This document shows positions 2,542-22,248 of a DNA stretch of 64,000 nt, one piece after another. Position numbers and translations under genes: made by a program. The notes beneath the pieces are model-generated. The model was not told the DNA's origin and searched no databases. It saw only the letters and a program-made list of their open reading frames with translations. Each line of letters starts with the position of its first letter. Positions within the stretch are counted from its first letter, which is position 1. The stretch is taken from IMG/VR virus record IMGVR_UViG_3300044641_009805, positions 124,001 to 188,000 of that record; one strand, 5' to 3'.

Positions 2542-4470
2542 TTGCAAACATTCAATAAAAGCATATTCGAAAATAGTTCTAGACCTCTCATCATTCCTGA
2601 TGAAGTTAAGGTTATTTTTGTAGCTGATCTCTTTTCAGAGGATTATGTCGGTGGAGCAGAACTAACCACGCAGGCTTTGATTGATGAGTGCCCTTTGCCT
2701 TACATGAAAATTCGTTCAAAAGAGCTGACCATGCACTTATTAGCTCAAGGAACTAATAAGTTTTGGATCTTTGGCAATTTTGCTCAAATGAACATGGAAC
2801 TAGTTCCAAGCATAATTGGAAATTTGAACTATTCTATCCTAGAATATGATTACAAATATTGCAAGTACAGATCTCCTGAAAAACATTCTGAAAAAACCGG
2901 ATCTCCGTGCGATTGTCATAATCAATTCAACGGAAAATTAATCTCTGCTTTTTACTACGGAGCAAAAGTTTTGTGGTGGATGTCAGAGGCGCAGAAAGAT
3001 CGTTATCACAGAATGTTCCCATTTTTATCTGAAAAAGATAATGTTGTCTTATCAAGCGTATTTTCGAAAAAAACCCTAGGTACCATCAAGTGGCTTAGAG
3101 AAGTTGTTTCTTCATCAGGATCAGATCGAAAAGGATGGGTAGTCTTAGGTTCAGAATCTTGGGTAAAAGGAGCTCAAGCTGCAGAAAAATGGTGCCTGGA
3201 CAACAAAGTAGAATATGAAGTTGTCTGGAATGTAGCTTACGAAGTCATGTTGGAAAAGCTAGCTAATGCAGAAGGGTTTGTATACCTTCCAGCAGGTGCT
3301 GATACCTGCCCAAGAATGGTCATAGAAGCGAAGCTTTTGGGTTGCAAACTTCATTTGAACGAAAACGTACAACATAAAAATGAAGATTGGTTCTCTACAA
3401 ATAACATTGAAGAGATTGAAGAGTACTTGTTTGGAGCACCAACTCTATTTTGGAATTACATAAAAAAGATGATGGAATATCGTCCTAACATCAGCGGATA
3501 CATGACGGTTTATAACGCATTGTCTCAAGAATATCCATTTATACAGTGCGTTAAGTCTATGCTTCCTTTTTGCGAGGAGGTTTGTATTGTTGATGGAGGT
3601 TCTACAGACGGCACTTGGGAGAAGCTTCAAGAATTGTCATCTACGGAAACAAAGATCAAACTGAAGCAAGTGACAAGAGATTGGAGCCATCCTAGATTTG
3701 CTGTTTTTGACGGAATGCAAAAAGCAGAAGCCCGTTCCATGTGCACAGGAGATTTTTGTTGGCAAATGGATTCAGATGAAATAGTGCACGAAGACGATTA
3801 TGAAAAAATATTAAACTTATGTGCAAAATTTCCAGCTAACGTAGATCTTATATCATTACCAGTTGTTGAATATTGGGGAGGTCCTAAGAAAGTTAGAGCC
3901 GACGTTCTTCCTTGGAAGTGGAGATTAAGTAAAAATAAGAAAAATATCACTCACGGAATACCTTCAGATGCTCGTCGAACTGATGAAAATGGAAATCTTT
4001 ATGCGGCTTATGGAGATGGATGTGACATGATAGATTCATCATCTTACGAAAGAATACCTCACGTAACTTTTTACACTTCTGAAGTTGACAGTGCAAGAAA
4101 GCAAGCAGTTTCCGGTGACGCTGAAGCAATAAAGAATTATCAAGAATGGTTCAACAAAGTCGTCGATAATTTGCCTGGAGTATTTCATTATAGCTGGTTT
4201 GATCTGCCCAGAAAGATTAAACTGTATAAGAAATATTGGACCAAACACTGGGAATCGTTGTCTGGAAAATCTTATGAAGATACTTCAGAATCAAATATGA
4301 TGTTTGATGTTCCTTGGTCACAAGTGACAGATGAAATGATAGAAGCTAGAGCTTCTGAACTCTCGGAAAAATTAGGCGGGTGGATTTGGCATCAAAAATG
4401 GGATGGTAAGACGAAAACTCATCATATAACGATAAGCAAATCTCAACCTAAAATTATGTTAGATAAATGA
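2542..4470 (+). CDS. Two-domain glycosyltransferase (GT-B/GT4-like N-half fused to GT2 C-half)
   Basis: N-half VGGAELTT...DTCPRMVIEAKLLGC; C-half YMTVYNA...IVDGGSTDGT...MDSDE; AGAGGT SD before a TTG start. Confidence 0.85.
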   Translation: MQTFNKSIFENSSRPLIIPDEVKVIFVADLFSEDYVGGAELTTQALIDECPLPYMKIRSKELTMHLLAQGTNKFWIFGNFAQMNMELVPSIIGNLNYSILEYDYKYCKYRSPEKHSEKTGSPCDCHNQFNGKLISAFYYGAKVLWWMSEAQKDRYHRMFPFLSEKDNVVLSSVFSKKTLGTIKWLREVVSSSGSDRKGWVVLGSESWVKGAQAAEKWCLDNKVEYEVVWNVAYEVMLEKLANAEGFVYLPAGADTCPRMVIEAKLLGCKLHLNENVQHKNEDWFSTNNIEEIEEYLFGAPTLFWNYIKKMMEYRPNISGYMTVYNALSQEYPFIQCVKSMLPFCEEVCIVDGGSTDGTWEKLQELSSTETKIKLKQVTRDWSHPRFAVFDGMQKAEARSMCTGDFCWQMDSDEIVHEDDYEKILNLCAKFPANVDLISLPVVEYWGGPKKVRADVLPWKWRLSKNKKNITHGIPSDARRTDENGNLYAAYGDGCDMIDSSSYERIPHVTFYTSEVDSARKQAVSGDAEAIKNYQEWFNKVVDNLPGVFHYSWFDLPRKIKLYKKYWTKHWESLSGKSYEDTSESNMMFDVPWSQVTDEMIEARASELSEKLGGWIWHQKWDGKTKTHHITISKSQPKIMLDK

Positions 4471-5189
4471 AAGGCGTAATATTAGCAGGTGGTACTGGAA
4501 GTCGTTTATATCCTTTAACAAAATCGACCAACAAATGTTTGCTTCCAATTGCAACCAAGCCGATGGTTTATCATGTTTTAGAATTGATGACTTCTTCAGG
4601 AATTGATGACATCATGTTGATCACAGGTCCTGAAAATGCAGGACAAGTCATGAATTTGTTGGGGTCAGGACTTGATTATTCCTGCTCTTTGACTTATAGA
4701 ATTCAAGATAAAGCTAACGGCATAGCAGCAGCAGTAAATCTTTGCAAGAGTTTTGTTGGAAACTCTAAATTTACCGTGTTATTAGGAGACAATATTTTTA
4801 GCGATTTTTCTAAACTAGCATCGCAAATTCGTGAGTTTTATTCATCGAAGGATGAATTTAGACTTTTCTTAAAAGAAGTAATAGACCCTCAAAGGTTCGG
4901 AGTACCAGTTTATCTTAATGATGAAGTTGTAGATATAATCGAAAAACCAAAATCTCCTCCTAGCAATAAAGCAATAGTGGGATTATACTGTTATTCTTCA
5001 AACGTCTTTGATGTGATTGAAGGTTTAAAGCCTTCTTCTCGCGGAGAATATGAGATATCGGAGTTAAATTCTTATCTAGTGAAAAATTGTAGTGGTAGCT
5101 TTTTTGATGTTGAATGTGAATGGGTAGACGCAGGAACTCATGAATCTTACAAAAAAGCTAATGAAATGATTTGGGAAACTTTAAAATGA
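4467..5189 (+). CDS. rmlA: Glucose-1-phosphate thymidylyltransferase
   Basis: MKGVILAGGTGSRLYPLT, LGDNIF, IIEKP, SRGEYEI, WVDAGT. Confidence 0.92.
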   Translation: MKGVILAGGTGSRLYPLTKSTNKCLLPIATKPMVYHVLELMTSSGIDDIMLITGPENAGQVMNLLGSGLDYSCSLTYRIQDKANGIAAAVNLCKSFVGNSKFTVLLGDNIFSDFSKLASQIREFYSSKDEFRLFLKEVIDPQRFGVPVYLNDEVVDIIEKPKSPPSNKAIVGLYCYSSNVFDVIEGLKPSSRGEYEISELNSYLVKNCSGSFFDVECEWVDAGTHESYKKANEMIWETLK

Positions 5190-6007
5190 AAGTAATCATC
5201 GGATCAGGGAAAGTAGCTAACATTATAAAAGATAAAGAAGACATTGTCTTGTCTCATTCGCAAATAGAGATTAAAGATGAAATGTCGATTGACTCGATTC
5301 TTTCTACATTTCCTGAAAAAACAGTAGTTGTAAACACTGCCGCTAAGATTAATCTAGAATGGTGCGAAGAGAACAAAAAAGAATCTGAACTAGTCAACGT
5401 AGTTGGTGCAGTAAACGTTGCAAAAATTTGCAAAAAATATCATCATCATCTATTACACGTTAGCAGCGGTTGCATTTTTGATGGAATGGAAACAGAAAAA
5501 GAGTATACTGAATTAGATGATCCATCACCAGCTTCTTGGTACGCACAAACTAAAGCAAATGCTGATATTTCGATCTTATCTTTGGGATATCAAAATATTA
5601 CGATAGTTCGACCTAGGCAGTTAATATCAGCTGTTCCTAATCCCACAAATATGTTAACTAAGTTTATGAATTTGCAAAAAGGCAATTTTATTGATTCAAA
5701 AAATTCTATTACTTGTATAGAAGATATGAAACTAATGATTGATCACCTGATTAGTAACAAATGTTATGGAGTCTATAATCTTGCAAACGTTGGTTGGATG
5801 AGCCCGTACCAAATAGCCAACAAAATAAAAGCTAAAATTTTTAGTGATTTTATCATCGATAAGATAAGCTACGATGATTATATAAAGAGTATAAAAGTAA
5901 AAAGAGTTAACACTTTACTAAGCGTAGACAAATTAATATCTACGGGATTTGTTCCCAGAAGTGCAGAGGAAGCTTTAGAATGGTGTTTAGAAAATTACGG
6001 GAATTAA
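5186..6007 (+). CDS. NDP-4-keto-6-deoxyglucose reductase of the RmlD superfamily, most like bifunctional 3,5-epimerase/4-reductase NRS/ER
   Basis: NLEWCE, SSGCIF, YAQTK (YxxxK), NPTNMLTK, NSITCIED; ATG at 5186 overlaps the rmlA stop (ATGA). Confidence 0.8.
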   Translation: MKVIIGSGKVANIIKDKEDIVLSHSQIEIKDEMSIDSILSTFPEKTVVVNTAAKINLEWCEENKKESELVNVVGAVNVAKICKKYHHHLLHVSSGCIFDGMETEKEYTELDDPSPASWYAQTKANADISILSLGYQNITIVRPRQLISAVPNPTNMLTKFMNLQKGNFIDSKNSITCIEDMKLMIDHLISNKCYGVYNLANVGWMSPYQIANKIKAKIFSDFIIDKISYDDYIKSIKVKRVNTLLSVDKLISTGFVPRSAEEALEWCLENYGN

Positions 6008-6008
6008 A

Positions 6009-6947
6009 ATGAAGGTAATCATTACAGGAGGAGCAGGATTTATTGGAGGTCATGCTGTTAGACATTTCTTAAGCTTAGGAGATTCTGTTCTTAACATAGA
6101 TAAACTTACTTACGCAAGCAAAAAAACTAACTTTGAAAATTCAAATTTTCTTCAGTTGGATATTTGCGAAACAGAGATTTTGATAGAACAAATCAAAAAA
6201 TACAATCCTGACTTTTTAATTCATTTTGCAGCAGAAACCCATGTAGATAATTCCATATTAGATTGTAATGATTTTATTCACTCCAACGTTAAAGGTGTTG
6301 CCTCAGTCTTAAATGCATGTAAAGCAACCGGTACAAAATTGTGTCACATTTCCACTGACGAAGTATATGGTCCAGCATATGATAGATCTTTTGTAGAAAG
6401 TGATCCATTAAATCCTTTAAATCCTTATTCAGCTACAAAAGCTTCAGGAGATTTGTTGATAAAATCTTATAAAAATACTTACGGGTCAGATTACATCATT
6501 GTTAGACCTTCTAACAACTACGGTCCAAATCAACATTCTGAAAAATTTATACCAAAGTTGATTGATTGCTTGAAAAAAGGTATTCAATTCCCTCTTTATG
6601 GAGATGGACGACAAGAAAGAGAATGGACATACGTAGAAGACACGGTAAAGTTAATAAGGATTTTGTTAACTTCTGAATCTGCAGAATGGAATTCTTGTTA
6701 TAATTTAAGTTCTGGAATGACATTCACAAATATAGAGACAGCTTCTCATGTGATAAAGACCTACAATCTTATTACAAATAACAATTTTGATATTTTTGAT
6801 GTGTTAAAAACATCAAAAGATAGACCCGGACATGACAAAAAGTATTGGATTTCTACAAAAAAGCTAAATTCTGTTGTAGATTTCAAATATATTGGATTTC
6901 AATCTGGGATAGAAAAGACAGTTTCTTCTTATGTCCAAGAACAATAG
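6009..6947 (+). CDS. rmlB: dTDP-glucose 4,6-dehydratase
   Basis: GGAGFIG, DKLTYA, HFAAETHVDNSI, ISTDEVYG, PYSATKA, NNYGPNQHSEKFIP, DRPGHDKKY. Confidence 0.95.
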   Translation: MKVIITGGAGFIGGHAVRHFLSLGDSVLNIDKLTYASKKTNFENSNFLQLDICETEILIEQIKKYNPDFLIHFAAETHVDNSILDCNDFIHSNVKGVASVLNACKATGTKLCHISTDEVYGPAYDRSFVESDPLNPLNPYSATKASGDLLIKSYKNTYGSDYIIVRPSNNYGPNQHSEKFIPKLIDCLKKGIQFPLYGDGRQEREWTYVEDTVKLIRILLTSESAEWNSCYNLSSGMTFTNIETASHVIKTYNLITNNNFDIFDVLKTSKDRPGHDKKYWISTKKLNSVVDFKYIGFQSGIEKTVSSYVQEQ

Positions 6948-7671
6948 ATTCGTTTTTGTATCACCCATGTATAATGCATCCGAAACCTTGCCTCGGATGC
7001 TTCATTCTATTTGTGGTCAATCTTATGATAATTGGCGAGTTATTTTGATCGATGATCTTTCTTCTGAAGAGCACGTCAAGAACTGCAAAAAAATACAAGA
7101 TGACTTTTCTTCAATGTTGGATCAATCCTACAAAAATAAAATTGAAGTTATATGGAACGTTGAAAAAAAATGGGAAGTTGCAAATGTCTTAATGGGAATC
7201 TCTAAATGCAATGATGATGACATTGTTTGTCGGATAGATGCTGACGATTGGTTAACAGATCTTGATGCATTAACGATTATCAATCATGCATATACTGAGA
7301 CAAATTGCGATGCATTGTGGACAGCGCATAGATGGAGTTTTTCTGATAAAAATATCAGCAGACCAATGCCAGATGATGCTGATGTATACGCTTATCCTTG
7401 GGTTTCAAGTCATTTAAAAACCTTTAGAAAAACTTTGATAAATGAAGTTAAAGATGAAAACTTTAGAGGTGAAGATGGAAACTATATTAGAAGAGCAGGT
7501 GATCAAGCGATATATCTACCAGTTCTTCACAAGTCTAAAAAGAGATTGTTTTTACCAAGAGTAATGTATCATTATACCATCAAAGATGTCCCTGAAACGT
7601 ATCAAACTGATGATGCTAGATTTCAAAAAGACGAAGCTATCTTTTTAAGAAAACGTGGGTTTGTAAAATGA
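6931..7671 (+). CDS. Glycosyltransferase family 2
   Basis: SPMYNA, ILIDDLS, RIDADDW (DxD motif). Confidence 0.88.
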   Translation: MSKNNRFVFVSPMYNASETLPRMLHSICGQSYDNWRVILIDDLSSEEHVKNCKKIQDDFSSMLDQSYKNKIEVIWNVEKKWEVANVLMGISKCNDDDIVCRIDADDWLTDLDALTIINHAYTETNCDALWTAHRWSFSDKNISRPMPDDADVYAYPWVSSHLKTFRKTLINEVKDENFRGEDGNYIRRAGDQAIYLPVLHKSKKRLFLPRVMYHYTIKDVPETYQTDDARFQKDEAIFLRKRGFVK

Positions 7672-8030
7672 AACAGCAAAATTTTCATGATTCTATCTCT
7701 AAACTATTGGTCGAAAGACTTTCAAAAAGAAAAAATCAAATTTTGAATAAAGCAACTTGCGTTGAGATTTATAATGATATATTTTTCACATTGTCTGAAG
7801 TGATAAAAACAGCTTCGACGCCTTTGTCAAATGAATCCGTGAATTTTTTAGCTCAAATGTACTATGACTCTATAAACATAAACGAGACTCAAGAATTAGA
7901 TCCTAACATCTTTACTCAAAGAGCTAGTTTAAAAAATATTGAAACTAAAGAAATCGCTTTAATGGCTGTCATGCTAAATGGCACTGAATTCGCTACGCCT
8001 TTCATTTCAGAGGTAAAACGAAGATCGTGA
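7668..8030 (+). CDS. Hypothetical protein
   Basis: 120-aa ORF translationally coupled to both neighbours; no recognised motif. Confidence 0.65.
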   Translation: MKQQNFHDSISKLLVERLSKRKNQILNKATCVEIYNDIFFTLSEVIKTASTPLSNESVNFLAQMYYDSININETQELDPNIFTQRASLKNIETKEIALMAVMLNGTEFATPFISEVKRRS

Positions 8031-8956
8031 AAATACATTTAGACAACGTGAATATGGGATCTAATTCAGGTCCAAATTCTTTTGCAAAGAGACTTGCAAA
8101 AGGCCTTATAGAATCCGGGCATGAGGTAGAAATTTATGATGGAAGAAATTCAGATGTTTCTTTGGTTTTTATTGAACCTAGTGGTAGACCCTTGGCAAAG
8201 AAAGTCATTCAAAGACTTGATGGAATTTGGTTTTCTCCATCTGAATTTCATGTAAAAAATGTTAACATAAAATCATTGTATCAAAAAGCCGATGGTGTGA
8301 TCTGGCAATCAGAATTTGATAAGAATATGGCATCAAAATGGTGGGGAATTCCAAAAAATGGAAAAATCATATTGAATGGCATAAATGCTGAACCCGTTAA
8401 ACAGTTTAAAATTTCTTCATTAGAACAAATTAGACAAAAGTATGAAATGCTTTTTGTCTGTTCAGCAAATTGGCACTCACAAAAAAGACTTGAATCTAAC
8501 GTTGAGTTATTCAAGCATTTACAAAGTTTTTATGGTTCAGCCGCGCTCATAGTGATGGGTTCAAATCCAAAAATGATTCCTGACGTAGACATATTCTACA
8601 CAGGACCTCAACCTCATGAAGTTTGTCTAGAAGTATTCTCTGCTTCAAATTGGATGATTCACCTTGCTTGGTTAGATCATTGTCCTAATACGGTGGTAGA
8701 ATCTTTATCTCAATTTACTCCTGTTATTTGTTCGGAGCAAGGAGGCACAAAAGAACTAGTTAAGAATTTTGGAGTGATTTTAAAAGAGAATCAACCATAT
8801 GATTACGAACTAGTCAACTATGATAATCCTCCAAAAATAGACGTGAGCCAAATAAAAGAAAAACTTCCAGACCTAAAAGACAAAAAGCCTGACACAGACG
8901 TCTCAATGAATAGAGTCATAAATGATTATCTAACATTTTTTAAAGAACTATTATGA
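8027..8956 (+). CDS. Glycosyltransferase, GT4-like
   Basis: SGPNSF, IILNGI, QKRLE, DHCPNTVVESLS...GGTKELV. Confidence 0.85.
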   Translation: MKIHLDNVNMGSNSGPNSFAKRLAKGLIESGHEVEIYDGRNSDVSLVFIEPSGRPLAKKVIQRLDGIWFSPSEFHVKNVNIKSLYQKADGVIWQSEFDKNMASKWWGIPKNGKIILNGINAEPVKQFKISSLEQIRQKYEMLFVCSANWHSQKRLESNVELFKHLQSFYGSAALIVMGSNPKMIPDVDIFYTGPQPHEVCLEVFSASNWMIHLAWLDHCPNTVVESLSQFTPVICSEQGGTKELVKNFGVILKENQPYDYELVNYDNPPKIDVSQIKEKLPDLKDKKPDTDVSMNRVINDYLTFFKELL

Positions 8957-10751: not shown

Positions 10752-10765
10752 ATAAGGAGACAAAT

Positions 10766-14695: not shown

Positions 14696-14696
14696 T

Positions 14697-15839: not shown

Positions 15840-16362
15840 AGCTAAAGAATTAACACATCAAAAATTCTCATTAAGAGAAGTTTGCGATGATGATCATCTT
15901 TGGTTAGTAGAACTTCATAACGATCCTGAAGTTTTGAAAAACTTAACTAATCCTCAACCTATTACTTTAGAATCTCACTTAAATTGGTGGAATTCTTTGA
16001 ATAAAGAAAAAGAAAAAAGATACGTTTTTTGTGTTAATGAAGAAAAAGTAGGATTTTGCAAAATCTATTCAATAGATCGTAATAACAAAAATTGTTTATT
16101 AGGAGCAGATATACACAAAGACTATAGAGGAAAAGGGTTAGCAAAGCACATGTGGCAATTAATGCTTCATGTTTGTTTTAATGAGTTAAGTCTACACAGG
16201 GTTTCTTTAACCACAGCATCCTATAATTTGATAGGACAAAGAGTTTACAAAAATCTAGGATTCAAAGAAGAAGGTAGACAAATTGAATCGTTGTACAGAG
16301 AAGAAAAATATCATGATTCTATATGCATGTATTTGTTAAAACAAGACTGGAATAACAAATGA
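15826..16362 (+). CDS. GNAT N-acetyltransferase (PseH/RimL-like)
   Basis: ITLESHLNWW, YRGKGLA, VYKNLGFKEEG. Confidence 0.88.
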   Translation: MSTVEAKELTHQKFSLREVCDDDHLWLVELHNDPEVLKNLTNPQPITLESHLNWWNSLNKEKEKRYVFCVNEEKVGFCKIYSIDRNNKNCLLGADIHKDYRGKGLAKHMWQLMLHVCFNELSLHRVSLTTASYNLIGQRVYKNLGFKEEGRQIESLYREEKYHDSICMYLLKQDWNNK

Positions 16363-17063
16363 AAATTTTCGTTGGAACGATGGAACATGGAGAACTAGAT
16401 TTTCAAGCTTCTAAAGAATCAATTCAAAATCAAGTTGGTTTTGAAATAACTCATCACATAGTTTCAAATCATCCAGAAAAAGAAGCTCATGAAAAATTAT
16501 TTTCCGCGTGGAATGAAGCTAAAAAAGATCATCAACTTTTCTTGAAGGTTGATGCCGATACTGTCTTGTCTCATAATGAAGTTATAAAAAACTTTGTTGA
16601 AGTTTTTGAAAGTAACTCTAGAGTAACAGGTGCGCAAGCTTGGTTACACGATTATTTGACAGACAGCTTGATATATGGACTAACTTGCTTAAAAAACACT
16701 GTCAATGTTGCAACAAAAGTTGATAAGTTGTATCCTGATCGAGCAGACACGGGTCATGATATCGTTTTACGCGGAAATCAATTACCTGAAAAGTTAATAC
16801 CTGCCGGGAAGCATTGCTGGTACTCTTCAGAATCTCAAGCATTTCATTACGGCTTTCATAGAGGTAAAAAGAACCAATCAGACATTCTTAATAAGGTCTA
16901 TTCTGCTTGGGAAAAAAACGATTTTGACAGAATCAGAGGCATGTGTCTAATGGGATTTAAGTTGTCTTTATCGTACGAAAATGTTGATTATAGAGATGAA
17001 GATTTTCAAAATGCTTTTGAAATTGCTAAGAGAACTTACTCAAAAGAAAAAGTAAAAAGATGA
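16359..17063 (+). CDS. Putative GT-A glycosyltransferase
   Basis: FLKVDADTVL (DxD motif); operon context. Confidence 0.55.
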   Translation: MKIFVGTMEHGELDFQASKESIQNQVGFEITHHIVSNHPEKEAHEKLFSAWNEAKKDHQLFLKVDADTVLSHNEVIKNFVEVFESNSRVTGAQAWLHDYLTDSLIYGLTCLKNTVNVATKVDKLYPDRADTGHDIVLRGNQLPEKLIPAGKHCWYSSESQAFHYGFHRGKKNQSDILNKVYSAWEKNDFDRIRGMCLMGFKLSLSYENVDYRDEDFQNAFEIAKRTYSKEKVKR

Positions 17064-17965
17064 AATTGCATGTATTGATTGACAACTTGTCTTACATTCA
17101 GTCTAACTGTTATCAACATCAGTTATTCAAAACTTTAAGTCAAGAGTGTGAATTGACCTTTAGCACAATTGATGACATATTGAAGAATAAAAAAATATCT
17201 TCAAACCATGATAGGATATTGTCATGTTTAAAGCTTAGGACAATAAACAACAACGTTCATACAATTAAGAGGTTTTTAGATAATAGAGAAATTTATATCT
17301 ATGAACAGGATCCTTGGGAATCTTTCAAAGATGATTCGCAATATAAGGGTTCATATCATAAGATTTATAACGAGTTGAATGTTTTATCCTTCTTAAATAC
17401 GTCGAAGTGGTGGAGCGACTTTATCAACTCTCAAGGAATAAGGTCTAAATTTGTGAAGATGTGGATGTTGCCAGAATATTGTTCTGCTGTTCCTAATTTA
17501 TCTTCACGACAAATAGATTTAGGCTTTTGTGGCCAACTACATCCTTATAGGAAAAAATTCTTTGATTATCTTAAAAGTGAAGGAATTGTTGTCGAGGTGA
17601 TGAAACCTGCTCCTTACCAAGAATTTTTGCAAAATTTGTCAAATATAAAAATCTATGTGCATAATGAGCAAGTCAATTGGCAGGTGAATGGAAAAAACAT
17701 CTCAGCAAATGCGCTGTGGATTAAAGATGTTGAGGCCGCAGCTAGAGGTTGTATAAGCATCAGAGATTATGAAGAAGAATTAGAAAATTATGTTCCTAAA
17801 AATAATATCTCTACGATAATGACTTATGATTCATTTGAGAATGCAATTGAAGTGATAAGAAGAAACTTGAAAGAAGTGAATCAACTTCAAGACAAAATAA
17901 TTGAATCAGTGAACGCAATAAAGAATGATGTTGGATGGAAAACTGTTATTAAGGCGTTAGAATAA
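17060..17965 (+). CDS. Putative GT-B (CgeB/YkvP-like) glycosyltransferase
   Basis: RQIDLGFCGQLHPYRKK ... KDVEAAARGC. Confidence 0.55.
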   Translation: MKLHVLIDNLSYIQSNCYQHQLFKTLSQECELTFSTIDDILKNKKISSNHDRILSCLKLRTINNNVHTIKRFLDNREIYIYEQDPWESFKDDSQYKGSYHKIYNELNVLSFLNTSKWWSDFINSQGIRSKFVKMWMLPEYCSAVPNLSSRQIDLGFCGQLHPYRKKFFDYLKSEGIVVEVMKPAPYQEFLQNLSNIKIYVHNEQVNWQVNGKNISANALWIKDVEAAARGCISIRDYEEELENYVPKNNISTIMTYDSFENAIEVIRRNLKEVNQLQDKIIESVNAIKNDVGWKTVIKALE

Positions 17966-17967
17966 TC

Positions 17968-17996
17968 TTGATCATTTTTTTATTTTTTCTTATAAT
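17968..17996 (+). promoter_or_regulatory. Sigma70-type promoter, probably leaderless
   Basis: TTGATC-17nt-TATAAT-6nt-ATG(18003); no SD. Confidence 0.7.
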
Positions 17997-18002
17997 CTTT
18001 GT

Positions 18003-18935
18003 ATGAAGAAACAATCTATTGCTGTTGTAGGTCAAGGGTTTGTTGGCGGCTCTCTTACTACTGTCTTTGCTGAAAGAGGATTCGACGTCTTGGTGCATGA
18101 CAAGACAGGAAAAGTCTGTACTGGAGGAAAGCAACCAACAACAACAGAAGGATTACACCCGACTAATGTAAATGAGTTCGTAAAGTCATGTGAAGCATCT
18201 GAAAACTTCTCAAAAGTGTATTTTGTGTGTCTACCGACTCCGATGTATGATGACGGATCTGCGGATCTGTCTATCGTAGAAGGTGTTCTTTCGCAATTGG
18301 CAACTTTACCTGGCGAGAGAATTGCTGTAGTAAAATCCACGGTTCCTCCTGGCTCTACTGAGAGATGGAACAAGATGTTTTCAGAACAAGGCCTTCATGT
18401 AGTTTTTAATCCAGAATTTCTCACAGAGGCCAACGCTCTAGATGACATGAGAAATCAAAATCGTATTATTCTTGGTGGCCCTCGCCCATGGATTAATACC
18501 GTGAAACAAGTTTTTCAAACAGCATTTCCAAAAGTTCCACTCATTAAAACTTCGTCAACGACAGCTGAGATGGTGAAATATGTCACTAATAACTTCCTGA
18601 CAGTTAAGGTTTCGTTTGCAAACGAGATGTATCAGGTTTGTAATGCCCTAGATAAATCCGGATTAAATGTGGATTATGATAAGGTAATTGAATATGCAAA
18701 GTATGATTCTAGGTTAGGATCAAGCCACTGGAGTGTACCTGGACCTGATGGTGACTTTGGCAGCGGGGGTCACTGTTTCCCTAAGGACATCAATGCTATG
18801 ATCGACGTTGCAAAAAATCTTGAAGTTAAACCGACTGTTCTTAAAGCTGCGTGGGAAAAGAATCTTGAGGTTAGAAAAGACAGAGATTGGGAACGTATGT
18901 CTGGCCGCGCAGTTTCTAAAAAATCCAAAGATTGA
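18003..18935 (+). CDS. UDP-glucose/GDP-mannose dehydrogenase family, short form
   Basis: VGQGFVG, CLPTP, KSTVPPGST, NPEFL, KYVTNNFL, catalytic GGHCFPKD. Confidence 0.9.
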   Translation: MKKQSIAVVGQGFVGGSLTTVFAERGFDVLVHDKTGKVCTGGKQPTTTEGLHPTNVNEFVKSCEASENFSKVYFVCLPTPMYDDGSADLSIVEGVLSQLATLPGERIAVVKSTVPPGSTERWNKMFSEQGLHVVFNPEFLTEANALDDMRNQNRIILGGPRPWINTVKQVFQTAFPKVPLIKTSSTTAEMVKYVTNNFLTVKVSFANEMYQVCNALDKSGLNVDYDKVIEYAKYDSRLGSSHWSVPGPDGDFGSGGHCFPKDINAMIDVAKNLEVKPTVLKAAWEKNLEVRKDRDWERMSGRAVSKKSKD

Positions 18936-18939
18936 ACTA

Positions 18940-18963
18940 ATAAGGTAATGTAAATTACCTTAT
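18940..18963. promoter_or_regulatory. Perfect 10-bp inverted repeat overlapping the putative promoter of the nuclease gene
   Basis: ATAAGGTAAT-gtaa-ATTACCTTAT, lying within TTGAAC-18nt-TACCTT-6nt-ATG(18968). Confidence 0.5.
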
Positions 18964-18967
18964 AACA

Positions 18968-19786
18968 ATGCAAGAAAATAATAGTTCCTTCCAAACTTTG
19001 CCTACTGGAAAACCGCATGTTTCTTTTTCTGAGGTAAAGTTATGGAAGGAATGTTCTTTTAGACATCATCTAATTCATATTAAAAAGATTGATTTGTCTA
19101 AACCTTCTCCTGTTTTAGACTTTGGAACCGCTGTCCATGCATCTTGCGAAAAATATCTGTTGACTCGAGAGATGGATCAGCAGGTCGCGTTTAGTCATCT
19201 AGACAATGCTTGGAAGAAGCATGAAGACAATCCTGATTTTTCTAAATCTGCTTTAGAGAAAGCTAAAGTTGAAGTATCTCAAATTCTATCTGAGGTTCCT
19301 GCATTTTTAGATAAAGAGTTTCCTGAATGGCAAGTCGTTGATGCAGAGCATCAACTTTATGAAGCCGTTGAAGGTCATCCTCATGCATTCAAAGGTTTTA
19401 TTGATGGAGTCATTAAAGCCAAGGGTAAAAGAGGAGAAACAGTCTATTGGATTCTCGATTGGAAAACTACTATAAGAGGGTGGTTTCGAGAAAAAAGATC
19501 AGACGACATGGTAAAAGCCCAGCTGGCTCTTTACAAAAACTATTGGTGTCAAAAAAATCCTAATGTTCCATTCAAGGATGTTAGATGCGGTTTTGTGCTT
19601 TTGAAAAAGTCAGCAAAACCAGGAGAACATTGCGAGTTATTTTCTGTTTCTCTTGGTGAGGTCCCAATTAAGAAATCTCTTAAGGTTGTTGGAAACATGT
19701 TGACCTCTGTCAAACGAGGCATTGCCATCAAAAATAGAGATGCATGCACATACTGTGAGTATAAAGGCACTGAGCATTGCACATAA
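18968..19786 (+). CDS. PD-(D/E)XK RecB/Cas4-like exonuclease with probable Fe-S cluster
   Basis: SFSEVKLWKEC, FGTAVH, KGFIDG, ILDWKT, QLALY, C-terminal CTYCEYKGTEHC. Confidence 0.88.
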   Translation: MQENNSSFQTLPTGKPHVSFSEVKLWKECSFRHHLIHIKKIDLSKPSPVLDFGTAVHASCEKYLLTREMDQQVAFSHLDNAWKKHEDNPDFSKSALEKAKVEVSQILSEVPAFLDKEFPEWQVVDAEHQLYEAVEGHPHAFKGFIDGVIKAKGKRGETVYWILDWKTTIRGWFREKRSDDMVKAQLALYKNYWCQKNPNVPFKDVRCGFVLLKKSAKPGEHCELFSVSLGEVPIKKSLKVVGNMLTSVKRGIAIKNRDACTYCEYKGTEHCT

Positions 19787-19846
19787 TTTTTTGTTAGTTT
19801 GATGAATTTTTATTACAACTTTTGAAAAGTAGGTAATATATCGTTG

Positions 19847-21091
19847 ATGCAGAAAAAGACAATATTGTTACTTTCAGATCACCCACTTTCTACGAGCGGA
19901 GTAGGAACTCAAGCTAGATGGTTGATTAATGGATTGATTTCTACAGGAAAATATAAGTTTAAGTGCTTCGGCGGTGCAATGAAGCATGAAGACTATAGAA
20001 CGATTGTAGTAAATGAAGATTTCATTATCAAACCGACTAACGGATTTGGTGACAGAAATCTTTTGCGACAAGTCCTTGCGACTGAACGACCAGACGCTCT
20101 AATGCTATTTACCGATCCTAGATTTTTTATTTGGGTTTGGGAAATGGAGGATGAAATACATCAAATATGTCCAATCGCATACAATCATCTATGGGATAAC
20201 GGTCCTTGGCCAGAATTCAATAAAGTGCTATATGAATCTACTGATTTAGTCAATTGTATAAATTGGCCCACCTATCAAATGGTTAAGGAAAGATTTCCAG
20301 AAAAAACCAACTATATTCCTCATGGAGTTCCAAAAGAAATCTATTATCCTCTACCTGAAGATAATTCTAGAAAAAACAAAGTTAAGATCTTAGGTTCCGA
20401 TAGAGCAGATCACTTTGTGGCTCTATATGTCTCTAGAAATGCTAGAAGAAAAATGCCAAGCGATATTTTAGTGTCTTGGAAGCAATTTTTAGATGCTTTG
20501 CAAGAAAAGCATGGTCATAAAAAAGCTACACTTTTGATGCATACAGATCCTCTTGATCATGAAGGTCCTAATCTTTATCATGTTATTGAGATGCTTCAAA
20601 TAGAAAATCATGTGAAATTTTCTAAGAGTAGAGTTGATTTTAATGAAATGAGAGAAGTTTATTCGGCATGTGATACAATCGTTAATAGAAGCTCTAATGA
20701 AGGATTTGGTTTACCCACTTTAGAAGCTATGATGTGTGGAAAGCCCATTATTGCTATTAAAACCGGAGGGTTAACTAGACAAGTTGAAGATCTAGAGACT
20801 GGTGAACAATATGGGATTGCATTAGAACCTGACGTTAAATCTCTGGTTGGTAATCAAATGGTACCTTTCATTTACGAAGATTTAGTTACTCATGAAAAAT
20901 TAGCAAATGCATTTTTAGAAATGTATGAATGGGGTCCTGATAAGAGAAAGCAAGTCGGAATGAGAGCATTAGAACACGCTCACAAAGACTATGATCTAAA
21001 GAAGATTGTTTCTGATTGGGATGTTTCATTGACAAAACTGATTGAAACTTGGAAAGACCAAAGAAAAGCTTGGGAGGTAAATTCTCTATGA
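19847..21091 (+). CDS. Glycosyltransferase family 4
   Basis: SGVG, IPHGV, RNARRK, EGFGLPTLEAMMCGKP. Confidence 0.92.
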   Translation: MQKKTILLLSDHPLSTSGVGTQARWLINGLISTGKYKFKCFGGAMKHEDYRTIVVNEDFIIKPTNGFGDRNLLRQVLATERPDALMLFTDPRFFIWVWEMEDEIHQICPIAYNHLWDNGPWPEFNKVLYESTDLVNCINWPTYQMVKERFPEKTNYIPHGVPKEIYYPLPEDNSRKNKVKILGSDRADHFVALYVSRNARRKMPSDILVSWKQFLDALQEKHGHKKATLLMHTDPLDHEGPNLYHVIEMLQIENHVKFSKSRVDFNEMREVYSACDTIVNRSSNEGFGLPTLEAMMCGKPIIAIKTGGLTRQVEDLETGEQYGIALEPDVKSLVGNQMVPFIYEDLVTHEKLANAFLEMYEWGPDKRKQVGMRALEHAHKDYDLKKIVSDWDVSLTKLIETWKDQRKAWEVNSL

Positions 21092-22248
21092 AAACTGTAG
21101 TTCTCAGGGGTCCTGTGATGACGCAATCTGGATACGGAGTTCATAGTAGACAGGTAGCAAAGTGGTTAATTAATCAACCTGATATTTCCGTGAAATTTAT
21201 GGCAACTCCTTGGGGAGATACTCCATGGATTTTAGATAAAGATTTTGATGATGGATTGGTCGGAAAAATAATGGAAAGAACGGTTGGTCCTGATTACAAG
21301 GCAGACGTTTCTTTTCAACTTCAGCTTCCTAATGAATGGGATCCAAAATTATCTTTAAAAAATATAGGTTTGACAGCATCAGTAGAAACAGACAAGGCTC
21401 ATCCGTCTTGGGTGACTGCTTGCAACAGCATGGATGCAGTTGTTTTTCCTTCTAATCATGCAAAAGAAAGCATTACTTCAATAGGCGAAGTAACTAAACC
21501 AGTTCACGTAATACCAGAATCTTTTTGCGAAGAAATATTAGGTAATGATCACAACTTAGATTTGTCAAAAGTTGACACTGAATTTAATTTTTTAGTGTTC
21601 GGACAACTTACGGGAAATAATCCACACAATGATCGAAAGAATATTCTGTTTACCATCAAATGGTTGTGCGAAGTTTTTAAGGATGATCCTGATGTTGGAA
21701 TAGTTCTAAAGACTAATTCAGGAAGAAATACTAAAATTGATAGAAATCTTATCATTAAGATTCTAAAAAATGTTTTATCTGAAGTTAGAAAAGGTCCATA
21801 TCCTAAATTACATCTTTTGCATGGCGAACTAAGTAATAAAGATGTAGCTGGTCTTTACACGAATCCTAAAATTAAAGCTTTGGTAACTTTGACTAGGGGA
21901 GAAGGATATGGATTACCAATTTTAGAAGCCGCCGCTTCTGGATTACCAGTCATTGCTACAAATTGGTCAGGACACTTAGATTTTTTGAAGCACACCAAAT
22001 TTACTAAGATTGATAGTAAGATCGTCCCAGTCCATCCGTCGCGCATAGATGATAAGATCTTTGTAGCAGGAGCTAAATGGGCTGAACCCCTAGAGTCAGA
22101 TTTTAAGAAAAAAATTGCAAAGTTTAGATCATCTCCTACTTTGCCTAAAGAATGGGCGTTAGAAGGAGCTAATGTGATTAAAGAGAAATATAGGTTTTCA
22201 GAAGTTGCGAAAATTTATGATGATCAATTAGGACATTTCTTAAAATGA
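21088..22248 (+). CDS. Glycosyltransferase family 4
   Basis: SGYG, DRKN, GEGYGLPILEAAASGLPVIATNWSGHLDF; GGAGG SD. Confidence 0.92.
   Translation: MKTVVLRGPVMTQSGYGVHSRQVAKWLINQPDISVKFMATPWGDTPWILDKDFDDGLVGKIMERTVGPDYKADVSFQLQLPNEWDPKLSLKNIGLTASVETDKAHPSWVTACNSMDAVVFPSNHAKESITSIGEVTKPVHVIPESFCEEILGNDHNLDLSKVDTEFNFLVFGQLTGNNPHNDRKNILFTIKWLCEVFKDDPDVGIVLKTNSGRNTKIDRNLIIKILKNVLSEVRKGPYPKLHLLHGELSNKDVAGLYTNPKIKALVTLTRGEGYGLPILEAAASGLPVIATNWSGHLDFLKHTKFTKIDSKIVPVHPSRIDDKIFVAGAKWAEPLESDFKKKIAKFRSSPTLPKEWALEGANVIKEKYRFSEVAKIYDDQLGHFLK

What the first reader, a model, noticed from the sequence alone, without database searches (positions are those of the whole stretch)
2542..22248. Self-contained ~20 kb phage glycosylation island next to the virion genes: candidate virion glycan-coat system
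Seen: about 12 glycosyltransferase(-like) genes (13 domains), plus RmlA/RmlB/epimerase-reductase, a PseB/DegT/GNAT trio and a UDP-sugar dehydrogenase. Most are translationally coupled, and they directly precede the late sigma factor and baseplate genes. No Wzx/Wzy/Wzm, initiating phosphoglycosyltransferase or multi-pass membrane protein is present, so this is not a lipid-carrier O-antigen or capsule locus. Known: soluble stepwise glycosylation of virion proteins occurs in Mimivirus and chloroviruses and in some actinobacteriophages. Inference: this phage builds a complex glycan with rare sugars on its own particle. DNA hypermodification or host-surface remodelling are the alternatives.
Basis: partly seen in the sequence, partly recalled or inferred. 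Interest (0 to 1): 0.9.

Follow-up and report, generated by a model that had tools for sequence, protein, structure and literature searches.

The report
Jumbo-phage glycan locus with swappable cassettes
A widespread freshwater jumbo phage carries a real, phage-owned 20-kb set of soluble sugar-building enzymes that most likely decorates a phage-made target such as virion proteins, but the target is unproven. A separate small gene cluster elsewhere in the genome is the better candidate for sugar-coating its DNA.

Summary
Window 2542-22248 encodes 11 glycosyltransferase-like proteins with 12 GT domains, plus one further candidate. It also encodes RmlA/RmlB/RmlD-like, PseB/PseC/PseH-like and NDP-sugar-dehydrogenase-like enzymes. 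None has a membrane span, and most genes overlap by 4 nt. A gp55-like sigma factor and baseplate genes follow directly.

It is not a misassembly. Nine large related phage contigs and independent lake metagenomes show the same flanks.

New findings:
1. The locus is universal in a large freshwater jumbo-phage clade. It has a conserved backbone and swappable cassettes. The rml cassette is absent from a 94-100 % identical phage.
2. Its last genes (PD-(D/E)XK exonuclease, GT4, GT4) form an old module also found in Flavobacterium phage immuto. That phage's published nucleoside analysis lists no glycosylated nucleoside.
3. About 92 kb away the genome encodes a dCMP hydroxymethylase (N177D, D169 kept). 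It is coupled to a GalE-like epimerase and, in this subclade, a GT whose top structural match is T4 beta-glucosyltransferase. This cluster is the better candidate for DNA glycosylation.

Best reading (about 0.45): a complex glycan is built stepwise in the cytoplasm on a phage-encoded, non-DNA acceptor, probably virion proteins. Host-surface remodelling and DNA glycans remain live rivals. It is a new variant of a known kind.

The parts
2421..2541 (.). Left boundary: divergent intergenic region between the minus-strand block (w1800, GroEL-like w575) and the plus-strand block that starts with the island
   Evidence: ORF map. TATAAT lies 33 nt upstream of the w2542 start, and TATAATTA lies on the minus strand at 2512. 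The same flank genes occur in 9 relatives.
2542..4470 (+). Two-domain glycosyltransferase, 642 aa: N-terminal GT-B (residues 21-314) plus C-terminal GT-A/GT2 (residues 311-626). Conserved left anchor gene of the locus.
   Evidence: Pfam GT2, E 4.6e-10. AF2 model pLDDT 89.9. VIA-align: HepE Z 19.6 for the N-terminal half; SunS/ThuS peptide S-glycosyltransferases Z 15-16 for the C-terminal half. 2503 homologs, the top 120 at 62 % identity or more. 55-94 % identity in all 9 relatives.
4467..5189 (+). RmlA-like glucose-1-phosphate nucleotidylyltransferase (variable cassette)
   Evidence: Pfam NTP_transferase E 1.6e-48. Best NCBIfam hit rmlA_long, 210 bits, below cut-off. Present in G001, G008 and G009; absent in near-identical G002.
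5171..6007 (+). RmlD-like SDR reductase that matches only positions 23-252 of the RmlD model; the start is probably the ATG at 5186 (variable cassette)
   Evidence: Pfam RmlD_sub_bind E 1.4e-26. NCBIfam rmlD 95 bits against a cut-off of 224. Candidate starts. Found only in G008 among relatives.
6009..6947 (+). RmlB-like dTDP-glucose 4,6-dehydratase (variable cassette)
   Evidence: NCBIfam dTDP_gluc_dehyt 290 bits, cut-off 365. The nearest relatives are unnamed metagenomic proteins, many on contigs of tens to hundreds of kb, with no named cellular source near the top. Both cassette junctions are bridged by contigs of independent lake metagenomes.
6931..7671 (+). GT2 glycosyltransferase (backbone)
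   Evidence: Pfam E 1.4e-17. 64-88 % identity in 8 of 9 relatives.
7668..8030 (+). Conserved 120-aa protein of unknown function (backbone)
   Evidence: No Pfam, NCBIfam or PHROG hit. 47-96 % identity in all 9 relatives.
8027..8956 (+). GT4/GT1 glycosyltransferase (backbone)
   Evidence: Pfam Glycos_transf_1 E 1.5e-6. 48-98 % identity in 8 relatives.
8953..9852 (+). GT1-like protein, weak family match (backbone)
   Evidence: Pfam E 0.004, below cut-off. 38-100 % identity in 8 relatives.
9831..10751 (+). GT1 glycosyltransferase (backbone); the start is probably the ATG at 9849
   Evidence: Pfam E 2.4e-8..
10697..11680 (+). GT2 glycosyltransferase (variable: close homologs only in G001 and G002)
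   Evidence: Pfam E 1.3e-7..
11677..12813 (+). GT-B (GT4-like) protein (variable: G001 and G002 only)
   Evidence: No Pfam hit. Atlas feature score 0.97 to viral and bacterial GT1/GT4 clusters..
12774..13637 (+). GT2-like protein (backbone); the start is probably the ATG at 12810
   Evidence: Atlas score 0.97-0.98 to GT2 clusters, and the Atlas record starts at residue 13. 36-82 % identity in 6 relatives.
13670..14695 (+). PseB-like UDP-GlcNAc 4,6-dehydratase
   Evidence: Pfam Polysacc_synt_2 E 2.9e-82. Best NCBIfam hit PseB, 277 bits, cut-off 408. 63-94 % identity in 6 relatives; replaced in G007, G008 and G009.
14673..15839 (+). PseC-like DegT aminotransferase
   Evidence: Pfam E 5.2e-81. 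Best NCBIfam hit PseC, 233 bits, cut-off 423.
15826..16362 (+). PseH-like GNAT N-acetyltransferase
   Evidence: Pfam Acetyltransf_3 E 3.2e-19. Best NCBIfam hit PseH, 65 bits, cut-off 93.
16359..17063 (+). Conserved 234-aa protein that travels with the PseBCH module; possible GT-A by a DxD-like motif only
   Evidence: No family or PDB match. Invariant D65-A66-D67 in a 7-sequence alignment.
17060..17965 (+). CgeB/YkvP-like (Glyco_trans_1_2) GT-B glycosyltransferase
   Evidence: Atlas structure TM 0.80 to Glyco_trans_1_2 and spore-maturation clusters.
18003..18935 (+). NDP-sugar (UDP-glucose-type) dehydrogenase, 310 aa, without the usual C-terminal domain
   Evidence: Pfam N-terminal and central domains only. 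NCBIfam TIGR03026 206 bits, cut-off 190, matching positions 2-295 of 413. 60-99 % identity in 8 relatives.
18968..19786 (+). PD-(D/E)XK (RecB/Cas4-like) exonuclease; first gene of the anciently conserved module
   Evidence: Pfam PDDEXK_1 E 2.5e-17. PHROG 'exonuclease' families. 48-100 % identity in relatives. A gene annotated PD-(D/E)XK nuclease lies just upstream of the GT4 pair in phages immuto and Mel-JY01.
19844..21091 (+). Core GT4 glycosyltransferase A
   Evidence: Pfam E 5e-16. 58-98 % identity in 46 of 50 related loci. 32 % identity to immuto gp181, 30 % to Mel-JY01, 25 % to Rhodothermus phage RM378.
21049..22248 (+). Core GT4 glycosyltransferase B (also passes the Pfam GT4-conflict cut-off); the start is probably the ATG at 21088
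   Evidence: Pfam Glycos_transf_1 E 1.3e-8; GT4-conflict 28.4 bits, cut-off 26. phrog_2170. 43-98 % identity in relatives. Adjacent orthologous pair in immuto and Mel-JY01.
22245..22538 (+). Conserved 97-aa protein with one N-terminal hydrophobic segment, between the core GT4 pair and the sigma gene
   Evidence: Hydropathy scan. 23-100 % identity in most relatives.
22531..23316 (+). Right flank: gp55-like late sigma factor
   Evidence: phrog_234 E 1.3e-5. 50 related loci at 28-100 % identity, 49 of them at 55 % or more.
27837..30173 (+). Right flank: gp25-like and gp6-like baseplate wedge genes
   Evidence: Pfam GPW_gp25 27.0 bits, cut-off 27.2; phrog_261/43. phrog_219.
47687..48664 (+). Collagen-like fibre protein rich in G-X-T triplets; a candidate glycan acceptor by inference only
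   Evidence: Translation. PHROG tail-fibre and collagen-like families, E 1e-46.

Best explanation
The island is the phage's own cytoplasmic glycan assembly line. I take its acceptor to be phage-encoded and not DNA, most probably one or more virion proteins.

**Proposed mechanism**
1. Phage enzymes supply activated sugars.
   - A dTDP-6-deoxyhexose comes from the RmlA, RmlB and RmlD-like enzymes. No RmlC was found, so L-rhamnose is not assured.
   - A UDP-2,4-diacetamido-2,4,6-trideoxyhexose comes from the PseB, PseC and PseH-like enzymes.
   - Possibly a UDP-uronic acid comes from the dehydrogenase-like protein.
2. Eleven or twelve soluble glycosyltransferases add sugars one by one.
3. The clade-wide backbone builds a conserved inner glycan. 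The backbone comprises the two-domain GT w2542, w6931, w8027, w8953, w9831, w12774, w17060 and the GT4 pair w19844/w21049.
4. Swappable cassettes change the outer sugars, giving 'glycotypes' among related phages. The cassettes include the rml genes, w10697/w11677 and the PseBCH module or its replacements.

**Shown:** gene content, solubility, phage ownership, clade-wide conservation with cassette variation, and a separate hydroxymethylase-linked cluster.

**Inferred:** the sugars made, the order of action and the acceptor.
For: - All island proteins lack hydrophobic spans. The 278-kb contig has no initiating phosphoglycosyltransferase and no multi-pass membrane protein apart from a 1722-aa ORF that I take to be the tape measure.
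- The locus lies between the same flanks in nine large relatives. GT hits cluster in a 17-34 kb stretch next to the sigma gene in all ten large contigs searched.
- Backbone proteins are about as conserved as the sigma and baseplate proteins, and w19844 is more so. Examples: w19844 66-75 % and w2542 55-72 %, against gp6-like 49-66 %. This points to a core function rather than an optional one.
- The exonuclease-GT4-GT4 module recurs at about 30 % identity in phages of Flavobacterium and Microcystis, whose cell surfaces differ. That fits a phage-borne acceptor better than a host glycolipid.
- Immuto virion DNA showed dA, dC, dT and fdPreQ1 only.
- DNA glycosylation has a better candidate cluster elsewhere in this genome:
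  - a dCMP hydroxymethylase with C146, D143, D169 and N177D;
  - a GalE-like gene directly upstream of it in all subclades;
  - in this subclade, a GT-B whose top VIA-align match is T4 beta-glucosyltransferase, Z 22.0.
- The island cassette type and the hydroxymethylase/GT type vary independently. G009 shares the hydroxymethylase type with G001 but not the PseBCH module. G003 and G004 share the PseBCH module but have another hydroxymethylase type.
- The GT-A domain of w2542 is nearest to the peptide glycosyltransferases SunS and ThuS. w17060 resembles the spore-coat GT CgeB.
- A G-X-T collagen-like fibre protein is encoded nearby.
- Eleven or twelve GTs exceed the mono- to trisaccharides known on phage DNA.
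Against: - No result identifies the acceptor. GT folds do not reveal it.
- The structural matches to SunS/ThuS and CgeB are fold-level only.
- Adjacency to virion genes is not conserved outside this clade.
- The island starts a long co-directional block and lies upstream of the sigma gene. Its timing could be middle rather than late, and promoter analysis did not separate classes.
- The phage is predicted to contain 5hmC, so a DNA acceptor exists in the cell.
- In G003 and G004 no recognised GT lies beside the hydroxymethylase.
- The immuto homologs are only about 32 % identical, so their function may differ.
- The published opinion on comparable clusters favours host-surface modification.
Confidence: 0.45

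Rival explanations
1. Host-surface remodelling. The soluble or peripheral GTs act at the inner face of the host membrane on host lipid-linked intermediates (Und-PP-sugars or lipid A-core). The host's own flippases and ligases export the altered glycan. The result blocks superinfection or stops progeny from sticking to debris.
For: - Gene content looks like an O-antigen, capsule or LPS-core locus: Rml, PseBCH, a dehydrogenase, and GT2/GT4 enzymes.
- Cassette polymorphism between close relatives resembles serotype loci.
- Iyer et al. 2021 interpret the 15-gene clusters of jumbo cyanophages this way (PMC7824862).
- GT-B matches include WaaG and PimA, which act on lipid-linked acceptors.
- Core-type assembly needs no PGT, Wzx or Wzy (my own knowledge).
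Against: - The backbone is universal and highly conserved across the clade rather than sporadic.
- The core GT4 pair is shared by phages of hosts with unrelated envelopes.
- No initiating transferase, flippase, polymerase or ligase occurs anywhere on the contig.
- Eleven or twelve GTs is a heavy investment for an accessory trait in a lytic phage.
Confidence: 0.2
2. DNA hypermodification by the island. The GTs, or a subset such as the conserved GT4 pair beside the exonuclease, glycosylate 5-hydroxymethylcytosine in phage DNA and may extend a first sugar into a longer chain. The cassette variation would be driven by host nucleases that recognise modified DNA.
For: - The genome and all sufficiently complete relatives encode a dCMP-hydroxymethylase-type thymidylate synthase homolog: N177D, D169 kept, L143D, as in T4 gp42. 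The diagnostic residues come from PMC13326640.
- There is a weak dCTPase-like protein of the dUTPase_2 family.
- Known DNA GTs are GT4-like GT-B enzymes.
- w21049 passes the Pfam GT4-conflict cut-off.
- The exonuclease-GT4-GT4 linkage is conserved.
- G003 and G004 have no recognised GT next to their hydroxymethylase.
Against: - The island is about 92 kb from the hydroxymethylase. That gene has its own GalE-like neighbour in every relative checked and, in this subclade, a second SDR sugar enzyme and a T4-BGT-like GT.
- Immuto has the homologous module but no glycosylated nucleoside.
- Mel-JY01 has the module and no thymidylate synthase homolog.
- Known DNA glycans have one to three sugars, against 11-12 GTs here.
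- Island cassettes and hydroxymethylase type vary independently.
Confidence: 0.12
3. Another soluble acceptor. The island makes a free or protein-primed cytoplasmic polysaccharide or a glycosylated small molecule. Examples would be a storage or protective glycan or a secondary metabolite. Alternatively it serves two targets at once.
For: - Structural neighbours include small-molecule GTs: BshA, MshA, SenB and tetrahydrobiopterin GT.
- Aravind and colleagues propose metabolite-making sugar clusters in cyanophages.
- Nothing in the island fixes the acceptor.
Against: - There are no tailoring enzymes typical of metabolite clusters, and no exporter.
- Clade-wide conservation beside core phage genes suggests a role in making particles.
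Confidence: 0.1
4. Artefact: host glycan genes joined to a phage contig by misassembly.
For: - GC content is low in the island (32-35 %) and rises to 48 % in the structural genes of the window. The contig as a whole ranges from 32 to 58 %.
Against: - The same flanks and order occur in nine large relatives and in a near-identical 213-kb contig.
- An independent 21-kb contig from a different study spans window 2000-7900 with 12 differences. Other runs bridge both rml junctions.
- 17 freshwater DNA runs hold 74-100 % of the sampled words of window 18968-23316.
- The upstream flank has the same low GC.
Confidence: 0.01

Closest known systems
Sugar-synthesis/GT clusters of jumbo T4-like cyanophages (P-SSM2 type), described by Iyer et al. 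2021 as capsular polysaccharide modification systems (PMC7824862)
   Same: Large phage-borne clusters with several SDR epimerase/dehydratases, a sugar-1-phosphate nucleotidyltransferase and many GTs of several families. They are polymorphic between related phages, and the target is not shown experimentally.
   Different: Here a backbone of eight or more GT-like genes is universal in the clade and sits between fixed flank genes. There are 11-12 GTs. The locus coexists with a separate hydroxymethylase-linked cluster. No sequence relationship to the cyanophage clusters was tested.
Virus-encoded soluble virion glycosylation (chlorovirus PBCV-1 capsid glycans, Mimivirus fibril glycans, mycobacteriophage capsid/tail glycans)
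   Same: Cytoplasmic, virus-encoded GTs and nucleotide-sugar pathways that include 6-deoxy and di-N-acetylated trideoxy sugars, with multi-domain GTs (my own knowledge; Freeman et al. 2023 as cited in PMC12619734).
   Different: No glycoprotein has been shown here. No homology to those viral GTs was tested. The host is bacterial, and the locus has a cassette structure.
Phage DNA glycosylation clusters (T4 alpha/beta-GT; RB69/DLP3 arabinosyl-5hoC; RL38J1; TET-linked GT clusters)
   Same: A thymidylate synthase homolog with an altered active site, a dCTPase-like protein, GT-B transferases and sugar-nucleotide genes. These features are met by the second cluster at G000:233939-240688.
   Different: The 20-kb island is about 92 kb from the hydroxymethylase and has four times more GTs than any described DNA system. 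Its homologous module occurs in phages without glycosylated DNA.
[quoted passage not shown]
   Same: The same gene order: PD-(D/E)XK nuclease, then two adjacent GT4 genes at 30-32 % identity over 91-97 % of their length, followed by further GT2, aminotransferase, epimerase and methyltransferase genes.
   Different: In those phages the variable glyco genes lie downstream of the GT4 pair, and the module sits beside replication or lysis genes rather than the sigma and baseplate genes. The function is unknown there too.
Bacterial O-antigen/capsule loci
   Same: Rml and Pse-type sugar genes, GT2/GT4 sets, and conserved flanks with variable middles.
   Different: No initiating transferase, flippase, polymerase, ABC transporter or ligase.
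'Moraphages', freshwater jumbo phages with four core GT orthogroups (PMC12619734)
   Same: Freshwater jumbo phages with a sigma factor, gp25/gp6 baseplate genes, several core GTs and a link to Rhodothermus phage. The GT target is left open.
   Different: Whether this contig belongs to that lineage was not tested. The paper does not describe the locus architecture or the hydroxymethylase cluster.

Membership tests
Lipid-carrier (Wzx/Wzy or ABC-transporter) O-antigen/capsule locus | Initiating phosphoglycosyltransferase (Bac_transf or WecA type) | tested here: not met
   PF02397 is absent from the 278-kb contig while the control genomes ring. No multi-span protein in the island or contig. PF00953 was not searched as a family.
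Lipid-carrier (Wzx/Wzy or ABC-transporter) O-antigen/capsule locus | Flippase/polymerase or ABC exporter (multi-pass membrane proteins) | tested here: not met
   The hydropathy scan finds no protein with many spans except a 1722-aa ORF that I take to be the tape measure. This is a crude method, and the contig is 84 % complete.
Lipid-carrier (Wzx/Wzy or ABC-transporter) O-antigen/capsule locus | Nucleotide-sugar synthesis genes plus several GTs in one operon-like block | tested here: met
T4-type hydroxymethylpyrimidine DNA glycosylation system | Thymidylate synthase homolog with a hydroxymethylase and cytosine signature (C146, L143 changed, N177D, D169 kept) | tested here: met
   Met for the genome, not for the island. 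The gene is G000:238678-239676. Alignment with E. coli ThyA, T4 gp42 and SPO1 gp29. Best PDB hit MilA, E 3e-41. Rules from PMC13326640.
T4-type hydroxymethylpyrimidine DNA glycosylation system | DNA glycosyltransferase(s) encoded with or near the base-modifying enzyme | tested here: not met
   Not met for the island, which is about 92 kb away. Met by the other cluster: a GT-B at 233939-234967, top VIA-align hit T4 BGT at Z 22.0 (generic GT4s reach about 21), and a GalE-like gene coupled to the hydroxymethylase.
T4-type hydroxymethylpyrimidine DNA glycosylation system | Glycosylated nucleosides in virion DNA | not testable with these tools
   Only indirect evidence: phage immuto, which has the homologous GT4 pair, shows none.
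Virus-encoded soluble virion-protein glycosylation machinery | Soluble cytoplasmic GTs and virus-encoded nucleotide-sugar enzymes | tested here: met
Virus-encoded soluble virion-protein glycosylation machinery | Glycan covalently attached to virion proteins | not testable with these tools
   Needs glycoproteomics. Candidate acceptors only.
Virus-encoded soluble virion-protein glycosylation machinery | Genetic linkage of GT genes to structural genes | tested here: inconclusive
   Linked to the sigma and baseplate genes throughout this clade, but not in immuto or Mel-JY01.
Pseudaminic acid pathway | All six enzymes PseB, C, H, G, I and F | tested here: not met
   Only PseB-, PseC- and PseH-like genes are present, all below equivalog cut-offs. 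Pfam and NCBIfam scans of the island ORFs gave no PseI/NeuB or CMP-sugar synthetase match; PseG was not specifically excluded. The likely product is the UDP-diacetamido-trideoxyhexose intermediate, which is an inference.
dTDP-L-rhamnose pathway | RmlA, RmlB, RmlC and RmlD | tested here: not met
   RmlA-, RmlB- and partial RmlD-like genes only, with no RmlC-like cupin detected. The final 6-deoxyhexose is undetermined.

The most novel reading that the evidence does not exclude
The two systems cooperate. The hydroxymethylase-linked GT puts a first sugar on 5hmC, and the island's GTs extend it into a long, cassette-variable oligosaccharide. The phage would then package DNA carrying glycans far larger than any known. 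The conserved exonuclease would remove unmodified DNA.
Probability: 0.07. Interest if true: 0.95.

Novelty: new variant of a known kind. Interest (0 to 1): 0.6.

Why it matters
Large glycosylation gene clusters in big phages are known, but no one has shown what they glycosylate. This locus offers a clean test case.

- It belongs to a very abundant freshwater phage clade. Its anchor protein has more than 2500 homologs in metagenomes, and the phage is present in at least 17 lake or river sequencing runs.
- It has fixed flanks, a conserved backbone of eight or more transferases, and cassettes that differ even between near-identical phages.
- The same genomes carry a separate cluster for DNA modification, so the DNA and non-DNA roles can be separated genetically.

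If the target is the virion, this would be a phage counterpart of bacterial serotype loci and of the giant-virus glycan coats. That would bear on phage stability, adsorption and recognition in nature.

A cultured phage with the core module, Flavobacterium phage immuto, makes the question testable now.

Tried and rejected
- **Promoter timing.** TATAAT is 4.5-fold enriched upstream of genes and peaks 12-14 nt before start codons. It occurs before island, structural and nucleotide-metabolism genes alike, so it does not date the island's expression. The T4 late motif TATAAATA is not enriched.
- **Cultured relatives.** There is no nucleotide match and no match to the fibre protein or to w2542 among 50,697 phage records. 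Only the core GT4 pair finds cultured phages.
- **Small unknown proteins.** w16359 and w7668 gave nothing in Pfam, NCBIfam or PHROGs. A profile of w16359 also found nothing in the PDB.
- **Direct sequence comparison with T4 BGT.** BLASTP of the hydroxymethylase-linked GT against T4 beta-GT (E 0.11) and against w17060 (E 1.1) was not significant. Only the fold comparison placed T4 BGT first, and by a small margin.
- **TET/JBP route to 5hmC.** No match was found, but the control genomes were silent too, so this is uninformative.
- **Cassette-less variant in reads.** No joint skipping the rml cassette appeared in the four runs laid. The listed joints are short cross-matches to a conserved RmlB motif.
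- **Host inference.** The nearest RmlB relatives are unnamed metagenomic proteins, so they give no host clue.
- **GT next to the hydroxymethylase in G003/G004.** The 445-477-aa neighbours are 53 % identical to each other but match no family or solved structure. A GT-B-like motif seen by eye is not evidence.
- **Misassembly.** Rejected.

Full report
**Setting.** The window is bases 124001-188000 of a 278,435-bp IMG/VR virus record that is linear and estimated 84 % complete. It has no nucleotide match among 50,697 deposited phage genomes. It is common in nature. Seventeen freshwater, lake or river DNA runs from many studies hold 74-100 % of the sampled words of window 18968-23316.

**The observation.**
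- ORFs from 2542 to 22248 all lie on the plus strand.
- Pfam finds GT2 domains in w2542 (C-terminal half), w6931 and w10697. It finds GT1/GT4 domains in w8027, w9831, w19844, w21049 and weakly in w8953.
- Pfam also finds an RmlA-type nucleotidyltransferase, an RmlD-like and an RmlB-like SDR, a PseB-type dehydratase, a DegT aminotransferase, a GNAT, a UDP-glucose-dehydrogenase-type protein and a PD-(D/E)XK nuclease.
- The best NCBIfam hits are RmlA, RmlD (partial), RmlB, PseB, PseC and PseH. All are below the equivalog cut-offs. The dehydrogenase passes its subfamily cut-off but lacks the C-terminal domain.
- ORFs without a Pfam hit were taken further:
  - w11677 looks GT4-like;
  - w17060 looks like a CgeB/Glyco_trans_1_2 GT-B, TM 0.80;
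  - w12774 looks GT2-like.
- The w2542 model (pLDDT 89.9) has an N-terminal GT-B domain (Z 19.6). It also has a C-terminal GT-A domain whose nearest solved structures are the peptide S-glycosyltransferases SunS and ThuS, Z 15-16.
- That gives 11 GT-like proteins and 12 GT domains. w16359 has only a conserved DxD-like motif.
- Twelve of 22 junctions have 4-nt start/stop overlaps.
- No island protein has a hydrophobic span. The contig has no Bac_transf enzyme. It has no multi-pass membrane protein other than a 1722-aa ORF that I take to be the tape measure.
- The gp55-like sigma, gp25 and gp6-like genes follow.
It missed the nuclease gene and the truncated look of two sugar enzymes.

**Is it phage DNA?** Yes.
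- Fifty IMG/VR loci encode a related sigma factor. Nearly all with enough upstream flank have the exonuclease, the two GT4 genes and the 97-aa gene directly upstream of it.
- I fetched the whole region from nine large relatives, two of them 99-100 % complete. All show the same left flank of a GroEL-like gene and w1800 on the minus strand, then a w2542 homolog, then a 17-34-kb glyco region, then the exonuclease-GT4-GT4-sigma block.
- An independent 21-kb contig from another study spans window 2000-7900 with 12 differences. Pieces from a third study bridge both ends of the rml cassette.

**Architecture across the clade.**
- *Backbone.* The backbone genes are w2542, w6931, w7668, w8027, w8953, w9831, w12774, w18003, the exonuclease and both GT4 genes. 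They are present in most or all of the nine relatives at 36-100 % identity.
- *PseBCH module.* PseB/PseC/PseH with w16359 and w17060 is present in six relatives. In G008 and G009 a different set of about a dozen genes replaces it, and G007 has a very different middle.
- *rml cassette.* It is complete only in G008. It is reduced to rmlA in G001 and G009. It is absent from G002, which is otherwise 94-100 % identical to this phage.
- *w10697 and w11677.* These occur only in the closest relatives.
- *Abundance.* w2542 has 2503 homologs in metagenomic protein sets, and the top 120 are at least 62 % identical over the full length.

The locus is therefore a core feature of a very abundant lineage, with cassette-type variation.

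**The DNA alternative.**
- The genome has one thymidylate synthase homolog, at 238678-239676. It is far below the ThyA equivalog scores.
- Its best solved relative is the CMP hydroxymethylase MilA, E 3e-41.
- I aligned it with E. coli ThyA, T4 gp42 and SPO1 gp29. It keeps C146 and D169 and has L143D, H147T, Q165M and N177D, the pattern of T4 dCMP hydroxymethylase.
- By the residue rules in PMC13326640 it should make 5-hydroxymethyl-dCMP rather than dTMP or 5-hydroxy-dCMP.
- All five relatives whose contigs reach this region have such an enzyme. G003 and G004 carry a T4-gp42-like version.
- A thymidine kinase, a dCMP deaminase and a weak dCTPase-like protein are present.
- Directly upstream and overlapping is a GalE/TviC-like epimerase. 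It keeps this position in G003 and G004 at 63 % and 55 % identity.
- In this phage, G001, G002 and G009 the cluster also holds a second SDR and a 342-aa GT-B.
- That GT-B has 258 metagenomic homologs and models at pLDDT 92.6.
- Its top VIA-align hit is T4 beta-glucosyltransferase: Z 22.0, 303 of 351 residues aligned. Generic GT4 enzymes reach Z about 21, so the margin is small.

This phage therefore probably has glycosylated 5hmC, but the genes best placed to make it are not in the island.

**Evidence on the island's own target.**
- The core GT4 pair has adjacent orthologs at 30-32 % identity over more than 90 % of their length. They occur in Flavobacterium phage immuto and Microcystis phage Mel-JY01. 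Each pair is preceded by a PD-(D/E)XK nuclease gene and followed by more GT and sugar-modifying genes.
- Immuto has an ordinary ThyA, and Mel-JY01 has no thymidylate synthase homolog.
- Published LC-UV-MS of immuto virion DNA found dA, dC, dT and the 7-deazaguanine fdPreQ1, with no glycosylated nucleoside reported (bioRxiv 10.1101/2023.04.13.536721).
- A module shared by phages of hosts with unrelated envelopes argues for a phage-encoded acceptor.
- Cassette type and hydroxymethylase type vary independently among six genomes. This is a small sample.
- Known DNA glycans carry one to three sugars.

Together these points favour a non-DNA, phage-borne acceptor. Virion proteins are the obvious class. 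A collagen-like G-X-T fibre protein and several fibre-like proteins are encoded nearby. This last step is inference.

**Cautions.**
- In immuto and Mel-JY01 the module lies beside lysis or replication genes, not structural genes.
- Promoter analysis could not time the island's expression.
- Glycans assembled on lipid A-core need no initiating transferase or Wzx/Wzy (my own knowledge).
- Iyer et al. 2021 read similar cyanophage clusters as host capsule or O-antigen modification.
- A paper on freshwater 'moraphages' lists four core GT orthogroups and leaves the target open. Whether this phage belongs to that lineage was not tested.

**Verdict.** My probabilities are:

| Reading | Probability |
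|---|---|
| Virion (phage-protein) glycan | 0.45 |
| Host-surface remodelling | 0.20 |
| DNA glycan made by the island | 0.12 |
| Other soluble acceptor | 0.10 |
| Artefact | 0.01 |

The remainder is unassigned. The locus is a new variant of a known kind. It has a conserved backbone plus cassettes, an unusually large GT set, and a separate hydroxymethylase-linked cluster in the same genome.

Noticed in passing
G000:C1:233939-240688 (outside the window; loci L006 and L101): A second, small glyco/nucleotide cluster. It holds a T4-BGT-like GT-B, an SDR epimerase/dehydratase, an unknown ORF, a GalE/TviC-like epimerase overlapping a dCMP-hydroxymethylase-type thymidylate synthase homolog (N177D), a thymidine kinase and a dCMP deaminase. 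It predicts glycosylated 5hmC DNA.
   Followed up: yes
window 53649-63076: Three tandem genes of 1011, 1023 and 1021 aa. The first and third were scanned, and their C-terminal parts match tail-sheath families (phrog_23, E 1e-39 to 1e-52). The three are 28-52 % identical to each other. A triplicated, enlarged sheath gene is unusual.
   Followed up: partly
window 44884-47286: Two adjacent paralogous 397-398-aa proteins, 63 % identical, with no family match, inside the structural block.
   Followed up: partly
window 43109-44866: A 585-aa protein with an 11-residue glycine run and several near-identical internal repeat units ending in glycine runs. It looks like a fibre protein and has no hit in cultured phages.
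   Followed up: no
window 1-64000 and the whole contig: Strong GC heterogeneity. GC is 30-35 % in the island and its upstream flank and rises to 48 % in the sheath region. Across the contig, 10-kb bins range from 32 % to 58 %, with the highest at 50-80 kb. The spacing between the sigma gene and the hydroxymethylase is the same (about 92-93 kb) in near-identical G002, which argues against chimerism for that stretch. The cause is unexplained.
   Followed up: partly
whole contig; for example window 13657, 17991 and 42950 (minus strand): TATAAT is 4.5-fold enriched upstream of genes. It most often begins 12-14 nt before the start codon, which would give leaderless or nearly leaderless mRNAs.
   Followed up: partly
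window 4467-6947 versus G002 (L083): The three-gene rml cassette is an insertion/deletion difference between two phages that are otherwise 94-100 % identical. In the same pair, w12774-w15826 drop to 82-94 % identity, and the GNAT ORF is 436 aa in G002 against 178 aa here. These are signs of recent recombination.
   Followed up: partly
window 575-1768 (minus strand): A 397-aa protein matching a phage GroEL-like chaperonin family (phrog_5725, E 1e-21) is the conserved left neighbour of the locus in all relatives.
   Followed up: no
window 25275-27776: An 833-aa protein between the sigma and baseplate genes is by far the most variable gene of the block. It is 71 % identical in the near-identical phage G002, and 26-50 % identical or absent in others. 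It may be a host-recognition protein.
   Followed up: no
window 49126-49914: A 262-aa protein in the structural block looks by eye like a peptidoglycan-binding domain followed by a cell-wall peptidase. It was not tested with any family search.
   Followed up: no
L102:10064-11494 (G003) and L103:9603-10937 (G004): In the two complete relatives with a T4-gp42-type hydroxymethylase, a 445-477-aa protein takes the place of the BGT-like GT next to the GalE-like gene. It matches no family or solved structure, and the two copies are 53 % identical. It may be a new DNA glycosyltransferase.
   Followed up: partly
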